From Vitrella brassicaformis CCMP3155 (taxonomy: Eukaryota > Protista > Chromerida): DNA of 64,000 bases. The notes under the pieces are model-generated. The model had not been told where the DNA came from, did not search any database, and saw nothing but the letters and a program-made list of their open reading frames with translations. The stretch is from contig CDMY01000592.1 of the NCBI GenBank assembly GCA_001179505.1, positions 62,001-126,000 of the forward strand, given 5' to 3'. A program made the translations under genes and the position numbers. This document shows positions 25,454 to 54,109 of this stretch, piece after piece. Position 1 is the first letter of the stretch; each line of letters opens with the position of its first letter.

Positions 25454-27341
25454 TACGCGTCAGGTTCTGGTGTGGACAGCCACGCGTGCCACAGGGCATT
25501 CCACTGCCAGAACTACTTCCTCAAGATCGACGCCCGTGACGGAGTCGAGAGGATCAGGGCCACCATACAGGGGCTGCAGCTGGGATGAGCTTCAGGCCGT
25601 CGGGCTGTTTGCTAAGCTGGCGGGTGATAAAGTGTCTATCGCCGCGTTGTACAGTGGCGGCGGTGGACGAGGAGGGTGCCGGGCTGGCTGTGTACACACA
25701 TGTTTGTGCTTGTCTATACGTGCGACTGACTGGGGGGCTGTCTCACGATGAATCGATCCATCGATCCATGGTAAGCAGGCAGGCAGGCAGGAGACTGCCT
25801 GACTGTGGTGTGCAGATGTGTGTGAGGCGGTGTGTTCTTTGCCGAGTCGGATCAAGGACGACTCATGTGCTGTGAGTGGGGTTATCCCGTGTAGTAAGTT
25901 TGCCTGCCAAGGCCTCCATCAGTCAGTGGCTTGTTCCATAATCCCAATTGGGAAGGTCTGGTCAGCTCACGCCACAGACACAAACACGGCAGTGACCGAC
26001 GACAGACAAGACGGCACACACAGACGAAAGCAGCACACACCATCAGACGCCGGAGGAACTGTGCCCTGCTGATCCAATCGTCCACCGACAGCGCCAGATG
26101 CGGCCCACTCGAAAGACAGTGAGTGAGCGAGAGACCGCAGCAAAGATGATAATTCCCAGTCCGCCATCCACCAGACCCGGCGCAATAGTCATCCTGCCGC
26201 AAGCAACGACAGACAGACAGACATGGAGTGAGTGAGACGGTCAGTCAGTCCGCTGGCTTCCGATCTATAATTGCCCTTACCTGCACGGTCCGCCGGGCAG
26301 TGACATGTCTGAGCATCTGGCGAGAAGCCCGATGCAAGGATGACACACCATGAGTTCAACGCTATCAGCTTCAGACAATTTGCACGCCCGATATCGCACC
26401 GATGATGAGCCGCTCTCGCTCTCGAGACTACTCCAGCGATACACACAAGTGCCAGTTTGAAGACAAACTTTATCTTGAGCTGCTGGTCGCCAAGAACGAC
26501 GGTGTCCCTCGCCGCATCATTGTTGTTGATCACACACTCGGGCAGCTCATCGGCCAGGCTTTCGAACGATCTGCTCTCTGACCTGCTGCTGGACCGACGC
26601 AAGCGTCAACGAGCCAGAGCCACCCAAAGAGTCCAGGACATTAGCACCCACGATTGTGGCGTAGGCGTTGATCTGCCGGCGCTTCTCGCTGCGGTTGCCG
26701 CAGTGTCCGGGCGACACATTTGGGGAGTCAGAGGGCGACCAGCAAGGCCAGGACGAGATGAATGTGCACCCACACAGACACGCACTCAACTGACTACTGC
26801 ATGGTTTCCATCCATCAGTGTACCACGGCGGTGAAGAGAGCGGAGTACCCCTCTTCCCCTGTAAAGCCACAGAGAAGTCCATTCATCCATCCTGTGAAGT
26901 GCCTCGGGCAGTCCACTGACCTGCAACACCCAACAGATGGCACACAAAGGGACAGAGAAATGAATCGCTGACTGCAGATCTCTGTGCAGCTCGTGATTGT
27001 GCGGTGCAGGGGGGTGATGTGGCGAGCTGGATGTGCCTCTTTTTCGTGGTGTTTGAGTTGTGTGCGCGTTACACGACGTTACGTTATACCGACGCCTGCC
27101 CTAACGCCCAATCTCCGCGCGGGAGAGAGAGAGAGAGAGGAAGAAAGGCAGCAGAGAGACTCACAAACGCACACAGGATGGCGACCAACACGCAGCCAGA
27201 AGGGCTCTCACTGCATCAGCTGACTTTTCTCTCTCTCTGTTCTGTGAAGCCGCCGTGATTTGGCTCCCGAGCTCACTTACCACACAGCGGATCAGCAACA
27301 GCGGCCTTCAAGCATCGCGTCTATTCGCACGGCTCACAGGC

Positions 27342-28795
27342 ATGAGGCCGCCCACGTCTGTCAGCGCCCCTCCTCCCGCCACGGCTGATCCCCCAGACAC
27401 AGACGTCCTCAGACAATCAGCTTCTGAATTGGACGTCTCGACGACAAGGTCAGCGAAGTCATCGAAGCATCAACCAAAGGCTCAAGGAGATGGCGAAGGC
27501 GGCGCTCGGCTCTCAGGCGTGTCCACCACCGTCTCGACATCGGTCTCCACCCCTGCAGTGGACGGCCGGGCTCCGCTTGGCGACGGGGATTTCGGCTGAG
27601 GAGGGCGATCTGTGGGGCTTTCTGGTGCTGCGGATTGGCTGTGTGACCTTGTGGCTGACGGACTACCCTCTGAGGCATTTCCTGCTCATCATCGGCCTCC
27701 TCCTGATCTATGCACTGTGGTCGTGGGGTGGTTTTAGTTTTATCTACTACCTTCTCGTTATCCTTGGGTATGCGAGGAGTTTGTTATTCGCTCCCGTGAT
27801 TCCCTTTGTGATTGTGATATGGACACCGCCGTCGCTGATGCTCTTGATTGGATTGGGAAGTCTGTGCGCGCCGCCTCTTTGGTGGGGCACTCGATGGCTC
27901 GTCTATTTCTCTATCGTTCTGACCATTGTCTATTCCGGGTTCATGTACTTATTCGCGGTTTCTAATTATCTCACTATGTCCGTTGAAAGCGATACCTTCG
28001 GTATGCGCTTCGGCGCACTGGCGTGGCTGGCTGGAGGGGCCCTTCTCCAGTTGGCTCTCTTCATTGTCATCTCGGAGCCGCGGCTCATCCGTGCATCGAC
28101 CAGCCCGACGGGTGGAAGGGAAATCGACGTCGATCACAACCGGCTCTCATGCTGCGGCCGTCGGGCAGAGTGGAGACCCTCGGCGACGGCCGAGTGGATA
28201 GCCAAGGCCCGGCAAACAGAGCCCTTCCTCTACCGCTCGGTGACCAAGCGGTGGCTCAAACGGATGGACTATCTCACCTTCATTCGGTTGTATAAACTGC
28301 TGGCCGTCGTGGGGATGGCCGTGGACTTCATTACCGATGCGGCGGTGGGGTTTCAAATGATCACCGGGCTTCCAGAAAGGCTATGGGGTCGTGCAAGATC
28401 CATCTGTATGGTCGATGGCAAATATCCGTGGAGTGATTATGAAAGGGAATGCATGGATACCACGATGAGCCGTCTGAAAAGTGAAGCGCAAGGCTATGGA
28501 GTTGTTGGCTTTGTCATCCTGGGCCTATCGCTGGCCGACTTCATATCGCTGTTCATTCACTACGGCATCCGCGGCTCTCCCTCAGTATGCCAGCACATCT
28601 AGATTGTCGCCTTTGCCCTCCTGGAAGTGCCCATCTTGGTGCTGAGAATTGTGTGGGCGATGGAGGCCAGCAATCCGACGGTCTTCATCGTATCTGCCTT
28701 CTTCACTCTGGTGACGGTTCTCTCTCGAGTCGGGTCGTTTGCGTGGAGCATGTCTATGCGGCGAAAGAGTGGATTGTCGACCGACTCTCAAGAGG
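27342..28795 (+). pseudogene. Intronless multi-pass membrane protein paralogue, disrupted
   Basis: Colinear with 47530-48870. A 1-nt frameshift near 27590 separates the leader MRPPTSVSAPP...LGDGD from AEEGDLWGFLVLRIG. A premature TAG at 28600-28602 replaces TGC in the paralogue, and homology resumes at IVAFALLEVPILVL. Confidence 0.8.
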
Positions 28796-30598
28796 TGAGA
28801 AGAGGAGGGAATGAGGACGTTGTGTGTCATTCCTCGTTGTCTTGTTTACTATGCACCAGGGAGCTCCATCGGTCGTGTGATGGACGGCACATTCTTGGGC
28901 ACTTGGAAGTGCTTGGGCGAAGTATGGTACTTCCTGCTGCTGCTGCTGATGGGACTGACAAGTGGCCGGCTGTCTGTTATCCTTCCAGTCAATCAGACAG
29001 GGAGGAAGGGAGCCAAACGATCGGTGGATTCCACCGCCAGCCGCAGGACCGAAGTGGCTGTGCGTACGGATCTACGGCTGTATACATGTGTGTGCAGCTC
29101 CATGCATGTCAGTCACGTGCTTGTTTGCCTGTTGTAGCACGAAGGGATGTAGTTTCATGCCTTTCAGCTGCTTGTCTTGCCTTGAGCCCCTTTCTTTCTT
29201 CTGGCTCATCGACATGTTCGTGTGACTGACTTGTTTCGCTGGTCGATCTGTGTGTCTTTCTGGATGGACGGCCGGTGGCTGGAAAGCGTGGATGGTGGAC
29301 GGATGTGACCGTGATTGATGTCTTGACAGCGAAGGTGCTGATGGTGTGATGTGGTGTGCATTGAGTGTATGAGGGCAGCGACGGTCTGTGCGACGACAGA
29401 CAGACAGACATGCACCCAACTTGAATGCGGTCCCGCTTTCCTGCCTCCCTGTACGTCTGTCTGTCTGCCTGTCTGTCTGTCGAGGTTGCTGTGGGTGCTG
29501 CGTGGGTGGGCTGACGAAGGGATGTGCGTGCGTACGATGGATGCCATGCTTTGACTGACCGGCCAGATGCGATGCGTGTGTGATGTCATGTGTGTGAGCG
29601 AGACAGTGAATGAGTGGTGTCCGTCCACCCATTTCCTGGAATACTGAATTCAGTCAGTCAGTCACTCAGTCAGTCAGTCGTCCGCGTGTCGGTCTCACAT
29701 ACCATCGGCAATCCACGAAGGAAGTCCACCAACAAGGAAGCAGCCAGCCGTATGCACACACACACACACACACACACGCCATTTCGCACATGCATCCACA
29801 CACGCAGCCATGGCCGAAGGGGCGCCTTATGTGTGTGGGTGTCTGTCTGTGTCTCATCCATCCATCCATCCGCTAATCCTGCCTGCGTGGCAACGTGGCT
29901 GGATGTTTGTGGGTCTGTCTGTCTGTGTGTGTATTGGTCTGTCTGTTCCATCGGCGTCACTCACCGGACAAAGGCAGTCAGTCAGTCATGGATCGGATGG
30001 ACGAGAGAGGTCAGTCATGAAAGCATGAACCGAGAAAGAGAGACACACACGGGCGGGGTGGATGGGTGGATGATGGGTGGAGCCGAGAAAAAGAAAGGGA
30101 GGCGCTGTGTGTGTGTGTAGTGTTGGCTGGTGTGGCGCTGAATGGATGGACGGACGTGAGGTAGAAGAAGGTCCTTGCTGCCTGCCCTGCTCTCCTCCCT
30201 CTCTCGTACTTGCACACAAACTGCCTCGGTCGATGTGATGTATCTGTGTGGGTGTTGGTGGTGGCTAACCTTTCTCTCTCTCTCTCTCTCTCTCTGTCCC
30301 AGGAAGAAACAAAACCAGTGAGAGAGTTCCTGTCATCCAATCCACACAACACGAACGGGCAGACAGACGACTGCAACACACAACGAACTCCCATGCTCAC
30401 AAGCAGCGCTGCACGACAGCCAACCAGCCTGACAGTGAGTGAGGCAGGCAGCCATGGGATCTCTCCACACACAATCACACACTCATTCATTCATTCAGTC
30501 GCCAATCCATCCATACTCCCCCCCCCGTCGGTGTGCTGCGTGTGTGGTGTGTAGTATGGAGTGTGTGTGTGTGATGGTGTGATGGTGTGATGGTCTGT

Positions 30599-41720: not shown

Positions 41721-44254
41721 TCAAGAGCGGCGAGTTGCCTCCAGCACAATCTCCTCACTATCGCCCCAATGGTGGATGGCGAAGTCGCCGATGCTCGCGT
41801 CGTTGCGGAACACCTGCCAGATGGCATCGCCAAGGGCGTCATGCACTTCCAGCCACAGCCGCACCTCCACACGCCTCAGGCCCCGCATGCCACCGTTGAG
41901 CAGAGACGTCAGGCCGCTCCTAACGAGATCGGCAGCGTCAGCGGGCTCTAACTCAGCGGGGACTGAATGAGGACACACACACACACACACGCACACAGGG
42001 CGGATGCACACACAAATGTATCGACGAACACCTTCCTGCAGTCACTGTATTCCCGCATACCTGATATGTGTATCTTTATGTTGCGAATCGCTGGGAGGCT
42101 GTTCGACCCCCATCCGTCAAAGAGGCCGCCCTGCGTGAGACTGACCCCCCGGACTGCACCCCATGGATATAAATTTTCACCCACACAGACCTCGGCCACC
42201 TGCCTCCCCGCCCCCAGTGCCTCCAGCACACCCCTCCTGTCCTCTGCGCTCACATCTATGCCAAACGCCACCATCACCTCCGTAGGCATCTTCTGCGCCA
42301 TCAGCCGGCCCGAAGCACCGCCCAGACCGCTGTAGACACGCAGTTGTCTGGCCCTTGGGAAGTGCGGCAGGTGGTTGATGACGTCGGGGATGGGCGAGCC
42401 GGTGTTAGGAGGGGGGACGAAGCCATCGGCATTGTCGACCTTCACGAGCCCCACCTTGTCGAATGAAAGGCTCGATGCGATGTCGACGGCCGCCTGGCTG
42501 GGGTTGCCGATGGGGTGGGTGAGGTCGTGCTGACTGAGCCTGTAGACTACCCTATGCGCCTGCCGTGCCGCCTCCTGGATGGCCGTCTTGATGAAGGGAG
42601 AGGGGCGAGGGGGGAATGTGTCGGCGTAGAAGAGGGACAGCTCGAAGGGGACCCACTCCGCGCCCTTCACAGTGATGGGCACGTCAGGCGACACGCAGCA
42701 GTTGTCGATCAGGTCATCGACAGCGAGCAGGGCGGCAAGGGCAGTGGGGCCCGCAAAGGCTGGAACCTGCACGTCGACCCTCTTGAGCGACTTGAGGCAC
42801 CGCGCGATGTGAGCACCTCCTACAGATGAAGAGAGAAGGACACCATTCGTGTGTCCTTGTCAACCCCTACCAAGACACTATAGTGTGATGTGCTTACTTG
42901 GAGCCGCGTCACGTTGGTGCCATGCTCGATCAGGCCGATACGCTCCAGTTGTCTGAGCGGCCCTGGCTGCCCAGCGGATGCGACGGGGAAGGGCTCAAAC
43001 ACAGCCGCCCACTCTTGGCCGGGCCATAAACGCCCTCGCACTTCTTTCAGCGACCGCGACGACTTGATGAAATGGCCCAGCTCGCTGGTACCCCCCTCCT
43101 CTTGACCCACACACTCGAGTGCGGGCATCTTCCATCCTCTCCTGTTGGACGGCTCCCGTGACGGCCCTGAGGGAGGGGAGGGCTGGGGGCTCGGAGAGGG
43201 GAGGGAGGGAAAGCCACCGCCGTCTGCGGCCGGTGGTGCCGTAGGCGGTGGTGGTGCTGCTGCTGAATTTGATCGTCTCCAGACTGCCTTCGGCCATGTA
43301 CTGCTGGCCCTCCTTCTCGCTCGCCTCGCGCCGCCCGACCGCATGGCCCTCCACGATGCTTATCATGATGTCCCGGCACCACAACCGCTCGCAGAATGGC
43401 TGAAGAAGGCTGAGGGCCGTGAGGTTGATGAGTCGCTTGCCGAGCTGGAAGGCCCCCTCAGGTGTGATGCTCTCCCAGAATTGGCGGTCTGCATCTGTGG
43501 TGCAGTCGATGTCGATGTGGGTCTGCTGCTGGAAGGCCCCCTTGCGGACTTGCCCCCACTGCTTGCAGAGGCTTGGCAGGGCGGACAGCTTGCGAGGGGT
43601 CATAAAGCTGAACACTGATGTCAGATGGTCGTCGCCAAAACCAGCAGGAGCCTGAACCAAAACACAGGACGACGGGAGAGGAAGCCGCATGAGAATGGAA
43701 GGCGGTCTTTGTGTGTTGTCTGTGGCTGTGTGTGGCTATGTGTACCTTCTTGCTGTCATCCCACACCTACACCCACATGACACCACACACCCAAGCACCA
43801 ACGACAAGCACCGAGCAGTGCTGTCCGGGCCTTTCTCTTGCGGTGTGTTTGCCTACCATGGGTGGCTGTGGGTTCGCGTGTGTCAGCACCGTGGCCTCGG
43901 TGTGCGGCACCATCACTTCGAACTCCTCCCGGTGTCCGCCCACCTCCCTCATGTATACCGCCGTCCGTCCACTGCTCTCTTCGATGCGATAGACGTCGGC
44001 CTTGACCCACCTCTGCTTGCCCTTCTCACGCTCGTTGGTCACCGTCTGCACACGACTGCCCTCCCGGTAGCGGCACGGCGCAGCGGATGCCATTGCCTAA
44101 CGAATCGAACAATCAAACGAACGAAGGAATGAGTCAGTGAGTGATGGTCTGACACGCGGTCTGACACGCGGCAGTGTCTGCCTGTTGCGCCTTGACTCAC
44201 CTCGCCATGAGGCAAAGCAGACGATGAAGCTGAAGCTGAAGATGAAGATCCCAT
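41721..44254 (-). pseudogene. Lineage-specific F-box-like family gene, probably frameshifted
   Basis: First exon MGSSSSASASS..., then AMASAAPCRYREG..., then GFGDDHLTSVFSFMTPRKLSALPSLCKQW (F-box-like). The frame switches without an intron near 43140 (AVTGAVQQ to RGWKMPALECV). Further exons run to the stop at 41721. Confidence 0.6.
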
Positions 44255-44307
44255 GGCGCCACTCAAGCGCGGCTGATAGGACAGAGCAATGACTGACAGG
44301 CTGCGCA

Positions 44308-44447
44308 GTCTTGCCCTAGTTGGGGCGCCTTCTCTTTTCTGTTGGCTCGTCGACATGCGTGTCCGAGGCAGACAGATGGACTGTTAAAGCGAATGCGGGG
44401 ATCTATCCATCCCTCCTATACCTGCCTCTTGGCCAAGCTCGCAAAAG
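44308..44447 (+). repeat. Direct repeat (about 140 bp), copy 1; copy 2 at 49207-49355; partial copy near 29170-29225
   Basis: Shared gccctagttg.ggcgcctt...ctgttggctcgtcgacatgcgtgtccgaggcagac...gatctatccatc...gccaagctcgcaaaag. Confidence 0.85.
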
Positions 44448-44830
44448 TGACAATATCGGAGTCAGACGAGAATGGAGCTGCCCCATCAGCAAAGCAAATG
44501 AAGATGGGTGGGTGGGATCTTGGCGAATTAAGAAGATAAGAAGATGGAGTCGCAGCCCCGTCGCCGCTTCGATGGTTTGGACCCAAGCTTGCGTGTCCAT
44601 GAGACCTCCGTCGTCACTGAATGCTTCTTTCGGCTTCGTCACATTCCTACTCGCTACCCCGAGCTACTGCTGATACTCCAACTGAAGAGGGAAGATAGGG
44701 GCCGCAGTTTCTGCCGAGCTCTCACTACACAGACAAGTCTACACAGCGGATCACCAACAGAGGCCTTCAAGCATCACGTTTATTCCCACGGCTCTCAATC
44801 TCTAAGATCGGCTCTCCGAGTGACGCAGAC

Positions 44831-47529
44831 ATGGAGCCGCCCGCGTTTGTCAGCGTTGCTCCTGTTGCCACGGCTGATCCCCCAGACGTCCTCAGACAAT
44901 CAGCTTCTGACATGGACGTCTCGACGAAAAGGGCAGCGGAGTCTTTTGAATATCAACTGGAGGCTGAAGGAGATGGCGAAGGCGGTGCTCGACTCTCAGG
45001 CGTGTCCACCATCGTCTCGACATCGGTCTCCACCCCTGCAGTGGACGGCCGGAATCGGCTTGGGGATGCTATCGCCAAGAGCTGGCAATTCGAGCTTTGC
45101 GTGTGGATCGTCATCGTTCTCAACTGTATCGCTGTCTGGATCGAGACATCCTTTAGGTAAGCATGTTCAACAGCAGCACACACATGCACTGTGATGCACA
45201 CCACAGACATGTGCGATCAATGTGACTATGTGTTTGTGTGTCGATGACAGTCATCGCGACCAGACGGTCAACAAGTGGCCGTGGATTGGAATACAGTTCG
45301 CCTGTCTGCTCTTCTTTGTCGCCGAGCTCATCTTCAAGATGGTCGCCCTCAGCTGGAGGTTCTTCAAGGTCGGTCAACCTCACACTCACTCACCAACCCA
45401 CACAAGCACGCACGCATCGCACATCGGCTGTTTTCTGTGTGCCCTCCATGCCTACAGGACGTCTACAACTGGATCGACTTGATGATTGTGGTCATGACCA
45501 TCCTGCCGTGGTACATATCGATGTGGATGCCCGCCCTGGGGTGGACCTCAAACGCAGAGATGGCGTGGCGCAAGCTCTCCATCCTGCGTATCATACGAGG
45601 ATTGCGCATATCGCGCGCTTTCAGATACCACCCCGTCTTCAGAGAATTGTAAGACACGGAAACGCACAGACATTGATTGATAACGTGCTATGTCCATCCT
45701 TTTGTGTCTGTTTGTGGGCCCGCCTCTGTGCAGCTGGATGTTGACGGGCGGTATCACGTACAGTCTGAAGACCCTCGTGTGGAGCGTCATCATCACGGCC
45801 ATCATGCTCTTCGTCTACGGCACATTCGTCACCACCATGATCGGATTCTCAAGCGACTTCCAACCCGAACAGGACCCGTCCACAAACCAGATCGCGGTAA
45901 GGCATCCCAGACCTCACACAGTCACTCCGAGGCATTGCACTAACATGGCCATTCTCCCTTTCTCGTTCGCCCAGGAGCAGTGCAGAAATCTCACCAGCAA
46001 TCTGACAGACGCGGATGCGGCTGAGCTCCAGGACCGTTTCGGCATCATCATTCCCCTCCTGCAGCAGCAGTGCGAGGCCTTTGTCGAGAAGGGCCGGCGG
46101 GCACTGATGGGTCTGGACGGCCTCTGGCCGTCGCCGCGCCTGCTGAGTGACGAGGACGGCGAGCCCTTCATAACCAACGAAGAGAAGGAGGAGGTCCAGT
46201 CGCAGTTCGGCACAGTCGTCAGGTCCATGCGCACTCTATTCCAAATCATGACACTCGGTGAGTGGCGTATGTGCAGATATGGACCGTGCAATACTGTCTG
46301 TCTGTGTGTGTGGCGTGGTGTGTGTAGACGACTGGACGGACGCCACTGAGGTGGTCGTCAAGCAGCAGCCGTGGATGTGGCTTTGCTTCGTGGGGTTCAT
46401 CTGTATATCCGTCTTCGCTCCGAGCAACCTCATCACTGCCGTCCTCGTCGAGAGCGCCACACAGGTACAAATCCCACCCCGGACACAGGCCACAATGCAC
46501 ACAACCCACCGTTCCTGTCCTTCAGATGTCGCGCGAGGACGAGAAGCGCCGTGAGTTTGAGAACCACCGTGAGATCTGGAAGCTTCGCTGCATGCTCATC
46601 CGCGTCATGAACGCCGGCGTCCGTCCTGACTCGGAAAACGGCAGCGGCGACCGACGCAACGAGCGCACCGCTATGGCCCAGCGAGGGACTATCGGCTCGC
46701 TGACCACCGCAGCGGAGGAGGAGGAGGCCAAGGCTTCGACGAGTGACCCCAAGGACCCCTCGCCCACTCACGGAAGGACGAACGGGATGGCGGGTGGTGC
46801 GCCGAGTCCCAAGGGTGTGAGGGGGATCTTCTTCAAGAGTCTGACGTCGCTGGTGGACCGGTCGTGCAACACACCGAAAGGGAAGCGGCGGATGAGTTGC
46901 TCCGACGTGTACCAGGACGTGCAGCTCAGCGAGATGAACGACTCCTTCACAAAGTCCAGGCTCGCCGAGGTCATGGGGAAGGCCGAACTCAAGGTGGGTG
47001 GGTGCCACCGACAGAAATGGCGATTCTGCGCACATTTCAACCGTATGTGTGGTGCCCCTTTCTCTCTGGTATCTGTCAGCGTCTGATGAAGATGTATGAG
47101 TGCGAGCCCAACGACCTGCTGTATGAGTGCGAGCCCAACGACCTGCTGGGTCTCTGTGACCAGCTCACGGTGGACTTCGAGACCCGAGACCCGACGGGCA
47201 GGCGCAAGGAGGGCGAGATCAAAATGGACGACTTCATCTTCGGCGTGCAGAGACTCAAGGTCAGTAGGAAAGATGGGAGTGGTGGCACACGTGTGCGCAT
47301 TTGGAAGGATGTGTGGCGTTCACTCTATCTCTCTGTGTCCGTCTGTGTGCGTGTCCAGGGTGGTGCTAAGAGCAAGGACTTGCTGCATGTGCTGACGCGC
47401 CTGTCGATGATAGAGCGCAACCAGGAGCACATCATGCGCAACCAGGGGCACATCATGAAGGTCCTCAACGCAGTCCGGCAGGGGCAACTCGCAAGGTACG
47501 CACACAATCGACAATCAGCTTCTGAATAG
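44831..47529 (+). CDS. Single-domain (6TM) voltage-gated cation channel, BacNav/CatSper/EukCat-like, with degenerate EF-hand-like and coiled-coil C-terminus
   Basis: S1 FELCVWIVIVLNCIAVWIET, S2 LLFFVAELIFKM, S3 YNWIDLMIV, S4 LRIIRGLRISRAFR, S5 LKTLVWSVIITAIMLFVYG, pore FGTVVRSMRTLFQIMTL/DDWTD, S6 NLITAVLVES, tail GEIKMDDFIFGVQRLK/GGAKSKDLL. Confidence 0.9.
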
Positions 47530-48870
47530 AATGTCTCGACTAAAAGGCCATCGGAGTCATCGGAGCATCAATCGGGGGCTCAAGGAGATGGCGATGGCGG
47601 TGCTCGGCTCTCAGACGTGTCCACCACCGTCTCGACATCGGTTCCTGCGCAAGCAGTGGACGGCCGGGCTGCGCTTGGCGACGGGGATGCTTGGGCTGAG
47701 GAGCGTAGTCTGTGGGGCTTTCTGGTGCTGCGGATTGGCTGTGTGACCTTGTGGCTGACGGATTATCCTCTGAGGCATTTCCTTCTCATTATCGGCCTCG
47801 TCGTGACCTATGCACTCTGGTGGTGGTGGGGGTGTTTCTCCGTACTTCTCGTTATCCTTGGGTACGAAGGGAGTTTGTTCGTTGACGACCCGCTCCTGGC
47901 GATTGTGATTTTTGCACCGCCGCCTCTGATGCTTCTCGTTGGATTGGGAAGTCTGTGCGCGCCGCCATTTTGGTGGGGCACTCGATGGCTCATGTATTTT
48001 TCTATTATTCTGAACATCGTCCTTTTCAGGTTCACGTTGAGTTGGGTTTGCACGGCGTCCATGCCTCGTGATCTCCGCTTTGGCCTGCGGTTCGGCGCAC
48101 TGGCGTGGCTGGCTGGTGCGATCCTTCTGCAGTTCACCCTCTTCATTGTCATCTCGGAGCCGCGGCTTATCCGTGCATCGACCAGCCCGACGGGTGGAAG
48201 GGAAACTGACGTCGATTACAACCGGCTCTCGTGCTGCGGCCATCGGGCAGGGTGGAGACCCTCACCGACGGCCGAGCGCATAGCCAAGGCTCGGCAAACA
48301 GAGCCCTTCCTTTATCGCTCGGTGACCAAGCGGTGGCTCAAACGGATGTACTTCCTCACCTTCGTTCGCTTGTCTAAACTGCTGGCCGTTGGGGGGATGG
48401 CTGTGGACTTGATCACTGATTTGGCGGTGGGAGTGGAATTCACCAGCGGGATTCCAATATCTTCGCTTGCAGAGTCTATTTGTGGGTTCCCCGATGCACC
48501 GTGGAGTGATGCTGATGAGGAGTGCATGACAACAGCGAAAAGCCGTCTTGAACGAGAATATCTAGGATATCAAGCTGTCGGCTTCATCATCCTGCACCTA
48601 TCGCTGGCTGACGTCGTGTCGCTGTTTGTTCATTACGGTATCCGCGGCTGTCCCTCCCTATGCCAACACTTCTGCATTGCGGCCTTTGCGCTGCTGGAAG
48701 TGCCCATCTTGGTGCTGACGATCGTGTGGGCACCGGAGGCTGTCAATCCGATCCTCTTCATTGTGTCTGCCTTCTTCACTCTGGTGACGGTTCTCTCTCG
48801 AGTCGGATCGTTTGCGTGGAGAATTTATGAGCGGCTGAAAGGTCGCGACGACCCCGAGCCCTGCTCCTGA
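47530..48870 (+). CDS. Intronless multi-pass (roughly 8-10 TM) membrane protein of unknown function; open frame lacks an early ATG
   Basis: Uninterrupted frame with many hydrophobic segments, paralogous to 27342-28795. The first in-frame ATG is more than 100 codons downstream of the GTG at 47617. Confidence 0.7.
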   Translation, partial: NVSTKRPSESSEHQSGAQGDGDGGARLSDVSTTVSTSVPAQAVDGRAALGDGDAWAEERSLWGFLVLRIGCVTLWLTDYPLRHFLLIIGLVVTYALWWWWGCFSVLLVILGYEGSLFVDDPLLAIVIFAPPPLMLLVGLGSLCAPPFWWGTRWLMYFSIILNIVLFRFTLSWVCTASMPRDLRFGLRFGALAWLAGAILLQFTLFIVISEPRLIRASTSPTGGRETDVDYNRLSCCGHRAGWRPSPTAERIAKARQTEPFLYRSVTKRWLKRMYFLTFVRLSKLLAVGGMAVDLITDLAVGVEFTSGIPISSLAESICGFPDAPWSDADEECMTTAKSRLEREYLGYQAVGFIILHLSLADVVSLFVHYGIRGCPSLCQHFCIAAFALLEVPILVLTIVWAPEAVNPILFIVSAFFTLVTVLSRVGSFAWRIYERLKGRDDPEPCS

Positions 48871-49402
48871 TTGATGGACGGATGCAGCACTCACGAGGTG
48901 AGCAATGGAGCGAGCCTCAACGAGATTGTGCATGTCTGACAATTGTCAGGGAGAGCCATCGGTCGTGTGACGGATGGCACATGTTTGGCCGCTTATGCAT
49001 GGTTGATTGGATTGACAAGGGGGTGGCTGTCTATTTTTTTCCGAGTCAATCGGACAGATACGGAGGGACTCAAACGACCGATGGGAGAATGTGGGTCGGC
49101 CCTGTGCGGATAAGTGTGCAGATATTTGCCTGTCAGTCAGTCAGTCAGTCAGATGGTCATTGGCATTTTGCAACAGAGATGTGTGTAGTTTCACGTCTCT
49201 TGGTGAGTCGTGCCCTAGTTGAGGCGCCTTTTTTTCTCTGTTGGCTCGTCGACATGCGTGTCCGAGGCAGACGGACAGACGGACTGTGAAAAACAAATGG
49301 AATGATCTATCCATCTTTTGTGCGTTAAGGAAACCTTCAGCCAAGCTCGCAAAAGGTGTTTTCTTTGCAAATCGGCAAACGACAGAACGGAGCCGTGCCA
49401 TC

Positions 49403-50819: not shown

Positions 50820-51432
50820 ATTGGTCAGACAGAATTGGATGAAGAATATCTCGCCAACCAGAGTGAGTGGGGTGATGATGTTGGCAATGGATTGATTGCC
50901 CTTCGAGTGACGGTTCAGATGCGCCGGACGCGGTCCGTGTCTGTCAAGTCACTGCAGAGAAAGCGGTAGGTCAGATACACAGTGGTCAGACAGAATTGAG
51001 TGAGGAATATCTCACGAACCAGAGTGAGTGAGTTGATCATGTTTGAAATGACTTGACAGTCCTTTGAGTGGGCGTTCAAATGCGCTCAGCGCGGTGGTCA
51101 CAGCTGCTTTGGTTGCCGAGAACGGAGCGCTGTTAGAAGGGTTCCCATTGTGAAAGAACGTGACCGAGCGAGGAGCTGCTGCTTTGTGTGTGAGAGGCTC
51201 TCACATGGGCGGTTCGCATTTGCTTTTGATCATCTGGGTGGGCTGCTTCTCTGCAATTTTATGTGGGTCAACTGCCAAATGGGGGCCTGCACGTCGAGAT
51301 TCTCGACATCGTCGAATGGACCCCTGGTGTATACATCCGATTTGACCCTTCACTCAAAGCGGTTAAAGTTTGCCTAGTGCGAAGAGGCTGCTTACTACCG
51401 CCTGAGCAGCCATACAGGGGGAGCCAGTCGCG
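50820..51432 (+). repeat. ~600-bp non-coding repeat element, copy with internal sub-repeats
   Basis: Near-identical to 53503-54109, from attggtcagacagaattgg to gagccagtcgcg. The internal unit gtcaagtcac...ggtcagacagaatt...gaatatctc...accagagtgagtg occurs twice. Confidence 0.9.
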
Positions 51433-53467: not shown

Positions 53468-54109
53468 AGCGCGAATGATTGTCTGTATGAATGTACTGAC
53501 TCATTGGTCAGACAGAATTGGATGAGGAATATCTCGCCATCCAGAGTGAGTGGGGTGATGATGTTGGCAATGGATTGATTGCCCTTCGAGTGACGGTTCA
53601 GATGCGCCGGACGCGGTCCGTGTCTGTCAAGTCACTGCAGAGAAAGCGGTAGGTCAGATACACAGTGGTCAGACAGAATTGAGTGAGGAATATCTCACGA
53701 ACCAGAGTGAGTGAGCTGATAATCTTTGAGGTGACTTGACAGTGGGCGTTCAGATGCGCTCAGCGCGGTGGTCACAGCTGCTTTGGTTGCCGAGAACGGA
53801 GCGCTGTTAGAAGGGTTCCCATTGTGAAAGAACGTGACCGAGCGAGGAGCTGCTGCTTTGTGTGTGAGAGGCTCTCACATGGGCGGTTCACATTTGCTTT
53901 TGATCATCTGGGTGGGCTGCTTCTCTGCAATTTTATGTAAGTGGGTCAACTGCCAAATGGGGGCCTGCACGTCGAGATTCTCGACATCGTCGAATGGACC
54001 CCTGGTGTATCATCCGATTTGACCCTTCACTCAAAGCGGTTAAAGTTTGCCTAGTGCGGAGAGGCTGCTTACTACCGCCTGAGCAGCCATACAGGGGGAG
54101 CCAGTCGCG
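53468..54109 (+). repeat. ~600-bp non-coding repeat element, second direct copy
   Basis: Near-identical to 50820-51432 and ends at the same motif, gccatacagggggagccagtcgcg. Confidence 0.9.

What the first reader, a model, noticed from the sequence alone, without database searches (positions are those of the whole stretch)
44831..47691. Channel body sits between two copies of another gene's leader and is in frame with that gene across one TAG
Seen: the channel's 5' region (about 44700-45070, including its ATG) is homologous to the 5' region of the multi-TM family (about 27250-27590). The segment 44895-45070 recurs at 47510-47691, 14 nt after what looks like an orphan donor (AG/gtacgcacac at 47496). 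Read unspliced, the channel frame runs into leader copy 2, stops at TAG 47527-47529 (TTG and ATG in the other copies), and the same frame then stays open to 48870. That downstream ORF has no early ATG. Inference: an intron-containing channel fragment was inserted into a TM gene with a ~180-bp duplication, making a channel-TM fusion later split by one substitution, or still expressed by readthrough or splicing. The TAG-A context is not a classic leaky one.
Basis: partly seen in the sequence, partly recalled or inferred. Interest (0 to 1): 0.78.

Follow-up and report, generated by a model that had tools for sequence, protein, structure and literature searches.

The report
Channel gene spliced onto membrane-protein gene
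In the alga Vitrella brassicaformis, the core of a voltage-gated ion channel gene sits inside the start of an unrelated membrane-protein gene; the two are copied into one RNA, and a tiny 51-letter intron holding the stop codon probably decides whether the cell makes the channel alone or a channel fused to that membrane protein.

Summary
A ~180-nt leader occurs three times (27400-27583, 44883-45066, 47498-47681). The channel frame meets TAG 47527-29 and stays open to 48870. DNA contigs of three runs from three studies cross both junctions and the TAG with no differences, so this is not an assembly artefact.

The organism is Vitrella brassicaformis. The leader is the native N-terminus of a Vitrella-only multicopy ~10-helix membrane family. 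Channel paralogues (P0008, P0011) have other N-termini and longer C-tails. The "orphan donor" at 47496 matches the last intron of both paralogues in phase and approximate position, so the channel lost its last exon.

One transcriptome contig (L001) runs unspliced from channel exon 9 across the TAG into the membrane ORF. In a second RNA data set (X8), contig cover is zero over 47506-47543 while both flanks are covered. One X8 contig breaks exactly where a splice from 47495 to 47547 predicts.

That 51-nt intron removes the TAG in frame. The predicted products are a 678-aa channel (intron retained) or a 1108-aa channel-membrane fusion (spliced). Readthrough is not needed.

Still open: direct read counts for the splice, whether the fusion protein is made, and how the rearrangement arose. 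The two flanking leader copies are only 81% identical.

The parts
44741..44830 (+). 5' UTR / promoter-proximal region of the membrane family, now driving the chimeric gene
   Evidence: It matches 27282-27340 and the upstream region of the intact family gene L002 at 90%. RNA contig X8 record 25 covers 44671-44887.
44831..45070 (+). Leader copy 1: ATG plus about 80 codons of the membrane-family N-terminus, forming the first part of channel exon 1
   Evidence: It aligns with the N-termini of P0002, P0003 and L008. Leader homology ends at 45064-45074.
45071..47495 (+). Channel body: the pre-S1 stretch 'IAKSW' through S1-S6, the TLDDWTD pore filter and the C-terminal region. It comprises the rest of exon 1 and exons 2-9, with 8 GT-AG introns.
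   Evidence: Pfam Ion_trans hits. Homology to Vitrella paralogues P0011 and P0008 starts at IA.SW.FEL.VW. Introns are shared with the paralogues.
47496..47546 (+). 51-nt neo-intron: a 13-14 nt stub of the channel's ancestral last intron (donor AG|GTACGC), then codons of leader copy 2 including TAG 47527-29. The acceptor is AAG|G.
   Evidence: The donor is in phase 2 inside an AG|G codon at about the position of the last intron of P0011 (also AG|G) and P0008 (phase 2 in a GC|N Ala codon). The intron is retained in L001. It is absent from X8 RNA contigs: cover over 47506-47543 is zero, and record 28 starts at 47544. Length 51 is 3 x 17, and the junction codon is AGG.
47510..47691 (+). Leader copy 2: family codons from about 22 to about 85, with no ATG and no promoter
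   Evidence: It carries a private cluster of changes in a block that is otherwise invariant in the family (47645-47655).
47547..48870 (+). Membrane-family ORF: the rest of the leader plus a body of about 10 helices, in frame with the channel, ending at TGA 48868-70
   Evidence: It is 56-65% identical to the full-length family members P0002 and P0003 (up to 78% to the part-identical, chimeric P0001). Private changes give pN/pS 0.43.
47973..48029 (+). 57-nt in-frame exitron inside the membrane ORF; it removes 19 residues of a hydrophobic segment
   Evidence: It is removed in L001. X8 record 29 ends exactly at 47971. GT..AG ends are shown.
48898..48949 (+). 52-nt intron in the 3' UTR, starting 27 nt after the stop codon
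   Evidence: X8 record 31 joins 48895 to 48948 ('cut +2', GT..AG). The paralogue-derived part of L001 also resumes at 48948.
27342..28803 (+). Paralogous membrane-family gene with its own ATG and leader, now a pseudogene
   Evidence: A 2-nt deletion breaks the frame, giving a stop at 27597-99, and there is a TAG at 28600.
44299..44411 (+). Fragment resembling the family's 3' UTR, upstream of the chimeric gene
   Evidence: It is 84-87% identical to 49206-49315 and 94% to L001 1578-1625.

Best explanation
This is a real, transcribed chimeric locus of Vitrella brassicaformis. The promoter-proximal region, ATG and first ~80 codons of a Vitrella-specific multicopy membrane-protein gene are joined in frame, inside an exon, to the core of a single-domain voltage-gated cation channel (S1-S6, filter TLDDWTD). 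That channel has lost its own N-terminus.

At its 3' end the channel piece stops 13-14 nt into its ancestral last intron. There it abuts codon ~22 of a second leader copy, followed by the intact ~10-helix body of the membrane gene. The whole unit is transcribed as one RNA.

The old donor (47496) pairs with a weak cryptic acceptor (AAG, 47544-46) inside leader copy 2. This makes a 51-nt intron that contains the TAG. If the intron is retained, translation stops at the TAG and gives a 678-aa channel carrying the foreign leader. If it is spliced, the frame continues and gives a 1108-aa channel-linker-membrane fusion (1089 aa when the 57-nt exitron is also removed).

What is shown: the DNA structure, the native owner of the leader, the homology of the donor, co-transcription across the junction, and the retained form. 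What is inferred from contig boundaries and depth arithmetic: the spliced form. What is only inferred: that the fusion protein is made and used.

The origin was most likely a single DNA-level event, either an insertion or replication template switching into a family gene or between two tandem family genes. It was not retroposition, because the introns came along.
For: - **DNA.** Three independent DNA runs cross both junctions and the TAG with 0 differences at single-copy depth and do not branch at 47544.
- **Leader ownership.** Family proteins P0002, P0003 and the L008 ORF start with this leader. Channel paralogues P0008 (1114 aa) and P0011 (687 aa) have unrelated N-termini and align only from 'IA.SW.FEL.VW' onward.
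- **Donor.** P0011 and P0008 each have their last intron in phase 2, 110 and 155 nt after the shared 'R|G.AKSKDL' intron. Window exon 9 is 137 nt, also phase 2, inside an AG|G codon as in P0011. Further intron positions shared with one or both paralogues (window introns 1, 3, 6, 7 and 8) confirm common gene structure.
- **Co-transcription.** L001, a JGI transcriptome contig, is 100% identical to 47416-47971 and 48029-48290. It crosses the donor and the TAG and has the 57-nt exitron removed, so it is processed RNA.
- **Splicing.** In RNA run X8 the bin 47506-47679 has mean depth 10.8, a total of 1879. This equals record 28 (47544-47679 at depth 8.42, total 1145) plus one paralogue contig from 47653 (27 nt at depth 27.2, total 734). 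So 47506-47543 has no cover while exon 9 (bin mean 10.5) and 47544 onward are covered.
- **Contig boundary.** Record 28 fits from 47544, and exon 9 ends in ...CAAG. A join of 47495 to 47547 would match back to exactly 47544. Its other 104 nt were not listed. The second piece of record 29 at the confirmed exitron was likewise not listed.
- **Frame and size.** 51 nt is 17 codons and the junction codon is AGG. Introns of 52 and 57 nt are spliced at this locus.
- **Selection.** On a long private branch (0.17 substitutions per site) the membrane ORF shows 21 synonymous and 26 non-synonymous private changes, pN/pS 0.43. Intact paralogues give 0.22-0.55. Of the two broken copies, L009 gives 0.94 and the 27k copy 0.45.
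Against: - The spliced junction itself was never seen letter by letter.
- The 104 unplaced letters of X8 record 28 could come from another exon ending in AAG. Exons 2, 7 and 8 also end in CAAG.
- The acceptor is AAG, whereas all 18 verified acceptors at this locus and its P0011 paralogue are CAG or TAG. The intron lacks the U/G-rich 3' end typical of Vitrella introns.
- The only full contig across the site (L001) retains the intron.
- No protein of 613-1950 aa from this locus exists in the public protein collection, so no assembled full-length fusion cDNA is on record.
- RNA depth is low and rises 3'-ward (about 1-6 over exons 1-5, about 13 over exons 7-9), which also fits an internal start.
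- The exitron removes a predicted helix, which would disturb the membrane protein's topology.
- Broken family copies carry only one or two lesions each (27k copy, L009). An open ORF alone is therefore weak evidence of use.
Confidence: 0.6

Rival explanations
1. This is a channel-only gene with a dead passenger. The chimeric gene makes just the 678-aa leader-channel protein ending at TAG 47527-29. The 5'-truncated membrane ORF is a young pseudogene carried in a long 3' UTR. The X8 contig boundary at 47544 reflects a minor, aberrant or unrelated splice.
For: L001 retains the 51 nt. The acceptor AAG is weak. There is no ATG before codon 134. Two of seven family copies examined are pseudogenes with few lesions. 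Leader copy 2 has lost a nucleotide block that is invariant in all other copies. The exitron deletes a helix.
Against: X8 RNA contigs give zero cover over 47506-47543 although both flanks are covered. The ORF is 446 codons long without a stop or frameshift on a branch of 0.17 substitutions per site, with pN/pS 0.43. From general knowledge of nonsense-mediated decay: a stop at 47527 followed by two spliced introns would normally mark the RNA for decay, whereas the stop at 48868 lies only 27 nt before the last intron.
Confidence: 0.25
2. There are two proteins from separate starts. The membrane ORF is expressed on its own, from an internal promoter inside the channel's 3' exons. Translation would start at ATG 47929 or at a near-cognate codon, independently of the channel.
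For: RNA contig depth in X8 is higher over exons 7-9 and the membrane ORF than over exons 1-5. The 5' end of L001 lies inside exon 9.
Against: L001 begins at a 21-nt tandem repeat, which is a typical assembly break and not a defined 5' end. Starting at ATG 47929 would drop the first three or four helices conserved in the family. The rise in depth also fits the 3' bias of poly(A) libraries.
Confidence: 0.08
3. Programmed readthrough of TAG 47527-29 joins the channel and the membrane protein.
For: The same frame runs on both sides of a single stop.
Against: The context GAA-TAG-AAT is not a known leaky context. The TAG lies inside a segment that the RNA data indicate is spliced out. Another in-frame TAG case in this genome was judged ordinary by an earlier follow-up (s1-205573).
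Confidence: 0.03
4. Assembly or scaffolding artefact, or a natively shared leader (channel paralogues normally carry it).
For: The family is multicopy, at roughly 5-20 times single-copy depth. The window has four 300-N gaps.
Against: Unitigs from three studies cross both junctions with 0 differences. Neither channel paralogue P0008 nor P0011 has the leader. A search with the leader found only membrane-family proteins.
Confidence: 0.01

Closest known systems
[quoted passage not shown] 2019, PMC6509283)
   Same: One S1-S6 unit, an S4 with arginines at every third position, a T-x-D-x-W type filter (TLDDWTD), and a helical C-terminal region. Pfam Ion_trans hits support this.
   Different: That paper lists no chromerid. 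I made no tree, so clade membership is untested. This copy has a foreign N-terminus and lacks its last exon.
Vitrella paralogues CEL92820.1 (P0008, 1114 aa) and P0011 (687 aa)
   Same: The same channel core. Six of the window's nine intron positions (1, 3, 6, 7, 8 and 9, the last being the orphan donor) are shared with one or both paralogues.
   Different: They keep their native N-termini (about 55 and 590 aa before S1) and a last exon encoding the C-tail. They are only about 48-62% identical, so neither is the direct parent.
Chimeric genes made by DNA-level insertion or template switching, with an insert flanked by a duplication (exon-shuffling cases such as jingwei; FoSTeS/MMBIR-type events). 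Named from my own knowledge.
   Same: A foreign promoter and N-terminus are captured. The insert keeps its introns. Homologous sequence lies on both sides. There may be microhomology (GAT..GC) at the left junction.
   Different: The flanking copies are only 81% identical and are not demonstrably sisters. The event may instead have bridged two tandem family genes.
Intron retention and exitron switches that choose between two protein products. Named from my own knowledge.
   Same: A short intron of a length divisible by three, with a stop inside it. Retained and spliced forms both appear in RNA.
   Different: The intron is a hybrid: an ancestral donor from one gene and a cryptic acceptor within the coding sequence of another.
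Alveolate multi-membrane-domain fusions (an adenylyl cyclase fused to a K+-channel-like domain in ciliates and Plasmodium; a guanylyl cyclase fused to a P4-ATPase in apicomplexans). Named from my own knowledge.
   Same: An ion-channel-type module joined to a second polytopic module in one polypeptide, in the same major lineage.
   Different: The partner here is an orphan family without known function. The fusion is young, restricted to one locus, and unproven at the protein level.

Membership tests
Voltage-gated ion channel superfamily, single-domain type (Pfam PF00520 Ion_trans) | Profile match to Ion_trans | tested here: met
   Exon 3 scores 25.5 bits (cut-off 25) and exon 6 scores 17 bits. 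Exons were searched singly. The joined model was not searched.
Voltage-gated ion channel superfamily, single-domain type (Pfam PF00520 Ion_trans) | S4 with basic residues at every third position, and a pore loop with an acidic filter before a Trp | tested here: met
   Exon 3 encodes LRIIRGLRISRAFR. Exons 5 and 6 encode FQIMTL|DDWTD. Paralogues carry the same motif.
EukCat clades A-C (Helliwell 2019) | Placement inside one of the three clades in a phylogeny | not tested
   No tree was made. The paper does not list Vitrella.
Vitrella membrane family (P0002 / P0003 type) | N-terminal ~85-aa hydrophilic leader with its own ATG, followed by the conserved polytopic body | tested here: not met
   The body and leader codons from about 22 to 85 are present (65% identity to P0002). 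The ATG and the first ~21 codons are missing at 47510. It is a 5'-truncated member.
Insertion with target-site duplication | The two flanking repeats are each other's closest relatives | tested here: inconclusive
   Copy 1 and copy 2 are 81% identical, against up to 89% and 86% to other members. The tree is star-like with bootstraps of 29-59. There is one unique shared change, GGC to GGT.
Insertion with target-site duplication | A donor copy of the insert with native ends exists elsewhere | tested here: inconclusive
   DNA contigs show a second copy about 94% identical over 45787-46040, and depth of about 2x over exons 3-7 and 9. It could not be fetched, and its ends are unknown.
Programmed stop-codon readthrough | A known leaky stop context or a downstream stimulatory element | tested here: not met
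   The context GAA TAG AAT is not one of the leaky contexts I know (own knowledge). There are no Rfam hits in 44000-49400.
Alternatively spliced or retained intron | GT-AG borders, and RNA evidence for both forms | tested here: inconclusive
   The borders are GT..AG. The retained form is seen directly in L001. The spliced form is inferred from zero contig cover and a contig boundary in X8.

The most novel reading that the evidence does not exclude
The 51-nt hybrid intron is a working switch. Spliced RNA yields a 1108-aa protein in which a voltage-gated Ca2+-type channel subunit is covalently tied, through a degenerate copy of the leader, to a 10-helix orphan membrane protein. Retained RNA yields the channel alone, or is degraded. 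This would be a newly born, still-evolving channel plus built-in auxiliary subunit in a relative of apicomplexan parasites. It would also show directly how a stranded splice donor recruits coding sequence of a neighbouring gene as its acceptor.
Probability: 0.3. Interest if true: 0.75.

Novelty: new variant of a known kind. Interest (0 to 1): 0.55.

Why it matters
Chimeric genes are usually found long after they form, when the traces of the event have gone. Here the seams are still legible. They include an exon-internal in-frame junction, a 13-nt stub of the lost intron, a second copy of the leader, and a stop codon that sits inside a newly made mini-intron.

If the spliced form is translated, the locus shows how a stranded donor site can rescue a fusion by using coding sequence of the next gene as its acceptor. 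It also adds a voltage-gated channel to the list of unusual polytopic fusions in alveolates.

For genome annotation, neither this channel nor a fusion model was found in the public protein collections searched (the exon 4-5 stretch, proteins of 613-1950 aa), so the locus appears to be missed or mis-modelled.

Tried and rejected
- **Mini-introns ending at CAG 47518 (23 nt) or TAG 47529 (34 nt).** Both are too short and out of frame. The second leads into a 71-codon dead-end frame.
- **Transcript contigs in metagenome contigs.** A search with exon 7 protein and one with an exact exon 9 pattern both came back empty. That collection evidently lacks the sample that yielded L001.
- **The window's own channel model in protein databases.** A search with the exon 4-5 stretch found only distant hits. 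A search with the P0008 core for proteins of 613-1950 aa found only P0008, P0011 and two outsiders.
- **A search with the leader alone.** It found only membrane-family proteins.
- **A leader tree to test the duplication model.** Unresolved.
- **Codon analysis of the leader.** It evolves near neutrally in all members, so it is uninformative.
- **AlphaFold model of the membrane ORF from a 7-sequence alignment.** Pfam gave nothing.
- **Rfam and tRNA scans of 44000-49400.** Empty.
- **The protein-atlas search.** Closed.
- **Joined (spliced) protein models.** This includes the one look-up that might have fetched the X8 junction contig.
Full report
**Organism and setting.** The window is eukaryotic: 57% G+C with short GT-AG introns. 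It belongs to Vitrella brassicaformis CCMP3155, because the membrane ORF's best named relatives are proteins of assembly GCA_001179505.1. The window has four 300-N gaps, none inside the finding.

**Observation.** A 184-nt segment occurs at 27400-27583, 44883-45066 and 47498-47681. The 5' UTR-like stretch 44741-44887 also matches 27282-27398 and the upstream region of an intact family gene (L002).

The channel is a 9-exon gene starting at ATG 44831 (coordinates under 'parts'). Ion_trans hits fall on exons 3 and 6. It has an S4 with five arginines at three-residue spacing and the filter TLDDWTD across the exon 5/6 boundary.

Exon 9 ends AG|GTACGC at 47495/47496. Read on, the frame meets TAG 47527-29 and then stays open to TGA 48868-70. 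The first ATG in that frame is at 47929.

**Not an artefact.** Contigs of DNA runs X1, X3 and X4 come from three studies. They cover 47407-47738 or 47193-47738, and X1 and X4 also cover 45023-45565. All have no differences and lie at the single-copy depth of each run (table 8). None branches at 47544.

The same call shows that the membrane family is multicopy. Depth at 47680-47853 is 460, against about 22 for single-copy sequence. It also shows paralogue contigs in which the leader runs straight into the membrane body (contigs jump from 45047/45052 to 47709).

**Who owns the leader.** P0002 (501 aa, intronless gene L002:345-1850), P0003 (cDNA contigs L003 and L004) and the intact ORF in L008 all begin with M-x-PPT-SV...DPPDVLRQSAS...STSVSTPAVDGR, followed by the first helix LWGFLVLRIGC. 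A search with the leader alone found only this family.

The Vitrella channel paralogues P0008 (CEL92820.1, 1114 aa) and P0011 (687 aa) have unrelated N-termini. They become alignable to the window only at IA.SW.FEL.VW, just before S1.

At nucleotide level, leader homology ends at about 45066-45073 and channel homology is visible from 45071 (protein) or 45083 (DNA). The left junction is therefore inside an exon, in frame, and placed at the border between the hydrophilic leader and the first helix.

**The 'orphan' donor.** I aligned cDNA to genome for P0011 (L006 on L005) and P0008 (L012 on L011). Both have an intron at ...LR|G.AKSKDL (phase 0), as the window has at 47259/47359. Both then have a last intron in phase 2, 110 and 155 nt further on.

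Window exon 9 is 137 nt (116 without its 21-nt tandem duplication). It is also phase 2, inside an AG|G arginine codon exactly as in P0011. The GT at 47496 is therefore the donor of the channel's ancestral last intron. The last exon, about 130 residues in P0011, is gone. Homology to the leader resumes at 47510, so only 13-14 nt of that intron remain.

**RNA evidence: co-transcription.** L001 is a 2925-nt contig from JGI sample 3300017148. The same sample yielded the spliced cDNA L012, and the other JGI sample, 3300017297, yielded the spliced cDNA L007, so both are transcriptomes. I take both to be MMETSP re-assemblies; that attribution is from memory.

L001 is 100% identical to 47416-47971 and 48029-48290. 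It crosses the donor and the TAG unspliced. It lacks a 57-nt GT..AG segment (47973-48029), so it is processed RNA and not DNA. After 48291 it switches to a paralogue inside the family's most conserved block, which is a chimeric assembly. Its 5' end lies at the 21-nt tandem repeat, a likely assembly break.

**RNA evidence: run X8.** X8 behaves as a transcriptome. It has no cover of the intergenic 44200-44547. One contig has a 52-nt GT..AG skip in the 3' UTR (48898-48949). Another contig (record 29) ends exactly at the exitron donor.

**The 51-nt intron.** X8 record 28 (299 nt, depth 8.42) fits 47544-47738 without a difference. Its other 104 letters are not listed. The tool also did not list the second piece of record 29 or the exitron joint, so such omissions are normal at this depth.

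Exon 9 ends ...CAAG and the window reads ...AAAAG at 47542-46. A join of 47495 to 47547 would therefore match back to exactly 47544, as observed.

Depth arithmetic supports this. The X8 bin 47506-47679 has mean 10.8, a total of 1879. Record 28 contributes 136 x 8.42 = 1145. The only other contig, a paralogue that begins at 47653 with depth 27.2 (table 3, positions 47576-47693), contributes 27 x 27.2 = 734. Nothing is left for 47506-47543, while exon 9's bin has mean 10.5.

The DNA runs do not branch here, so the break is RNA-specific.

An intron 47496-47546 is 51 nt, keeps the frame, makes an AGG codon at the junction and removes the TAG. It is only one nucleotide shorter than the confirmed 52-nt intron. 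Its weakness is the AAG acceptor, since all 18 verified acceptors here are CAG or TAG. That weakness fits partial retention.

I put the spliced form at roughly 70%.

**Predicted products.** Retained: 678 aa (leader-channel, tail YAHNRQSASE). Spliced: 1108 aa, or 1089 aa without the exitron.

From general knowledge of nonsense-mediated decay, the retained form has two spliced introns downstream of its stop and would be a decay target. The spliced form's stop lies 27 nt before the last intron and would not.

The channel's C-terminus is cytosolic. The family leader has no signal-like hydrophobic start, so a fusion is topologically plausible. This is inference.

**Is the membrane ORF still used?** Among six family sequences, W47 (this ORF) has a long private branch of 0.168 substitutions per site. 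At codons conserved in the others it carries 21 synonymous and 26 non-synonymous private changes, pN/pS 0.43. The values for the other members are:

| Family member | Status | pN/pS |
|---|---|---|
| L002 | intact | 0.22 |
| L008 | intact | 0.46 |
| L003 | intact | 0.55 |
| 27k copy | broken (frameshift + stop) | 0.45 |
| L009 | pseudogene | 0.94 |

 This suggests constraint, but the branch may partly predate the rearrangement.

Family pseudogenes with only one or two lesions are common: the 27k copy has a frameshift and TAG 28600, and L009 has one stop. The leader itself evolves near neutrally in all members. Copy 2 has lost a nucleotide block that all other copies, including copy 1, keep unchanged.

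**Origin.** The insert carries its introns, so the event was at DNA level.

Copies 1 and 2 of the leader overlap by about 176 nt (codons 22-80) but are only 81% identical. Both sit on long branches of an unresolved tree and share one unique change. A one-step insertion or template switch with a flanking duplication, followed by divergence, is possible. A bridge between two tandem family genes is equally possible. A fragment like the family's 3' UTR lies upstream at 44299-44411.

DNA contigs show a second copy about 94% identical over 45787-46040, and about twofold depth over exons 3-7 and 9. This is a candidate parent or sister that I could not fetch.

**What the membrane family is.** It has no Pfam match. 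The hits are Vitrella proteins plus two unnamed proteins from JGI transcriptome samples. Hydropathy and the model suggest about ten helices. The model is too poor (pLDDT 47.5) for a fold search.

**Limits.** The single read-laying run showed contigs, not reads, so splice ratios are unknown.

Noticed in passing
window 47093-47148: A perfect 27-nt tandem duplication in channel exon 8 doubles the peptide YECEPNDLL. It looks very recent.
   Followed up: partly
window 47415-47457: A 21-nt tandem duplication (95% identical) in exon 9 encodes RNQEHIM / RNQGHIM. Transcript contig L001 starts exactly here, probably an assembly break.
   Followed up: partly
window 47973-48029: A 57-nt in-frame exitron in the membrane ORF is removed in two RNA data sets. 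The cDNA of paralogue P0003 (L003) keeps the homologous segment. Removal deletes a predicted helix.
   Followed up: partly
window 44580-44684: A short repeat just upstream of the chimeric gene is present about 55 times in the genome by contig depth (1236 against about 22). Loose ends lie at 44580 and 44684. There is no tRNA or Rfam match.
   Followed up: partly
window 45418-46983 and 47332-47505: DNA contig depth is 2 to 2.7 times single copy, and a variant contig has 15 differences and 2 gaps over 45787-46040. So a second channel copy, about 94% identical including introns, exists elsewhere in the genome. It was not found among the public proteins searched.
   Followed up: partly
window 27342-28803: The paralogous membrane gene is a pseudogene. 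A 2-nt deletion at the end of its leader shifts the frame, and there is a TAG at 28600. An alternative-frame ATG at 27490 would read into the body.
   Followed up: partly
L009 (CDMY01000439.1) and L008 (CDMY01000694.1): The public annotation truncates family members (P0005, P0004) at internal methionines. L008 actually has a full open ORF with the leader. L009 has one in-frame stop at the conserved CQH motif.
   Followed up: partly
window 42000-44093, minus strand: A gene on the opposite strand starts at about 44093, so 44100-44830 is a divergent intergenic region. It holds both the high-copy repeat and a fragment resembling the family's 3' UTR (44299-44411).
   Followed up: no
window 50820-51432 and 53503-54109: A 96% identical direct repeat of about 610 nt lies downstream, next to two of the 300-N gaps. 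25-nt inverted matches sit at the gap edges.
   Followed up: no
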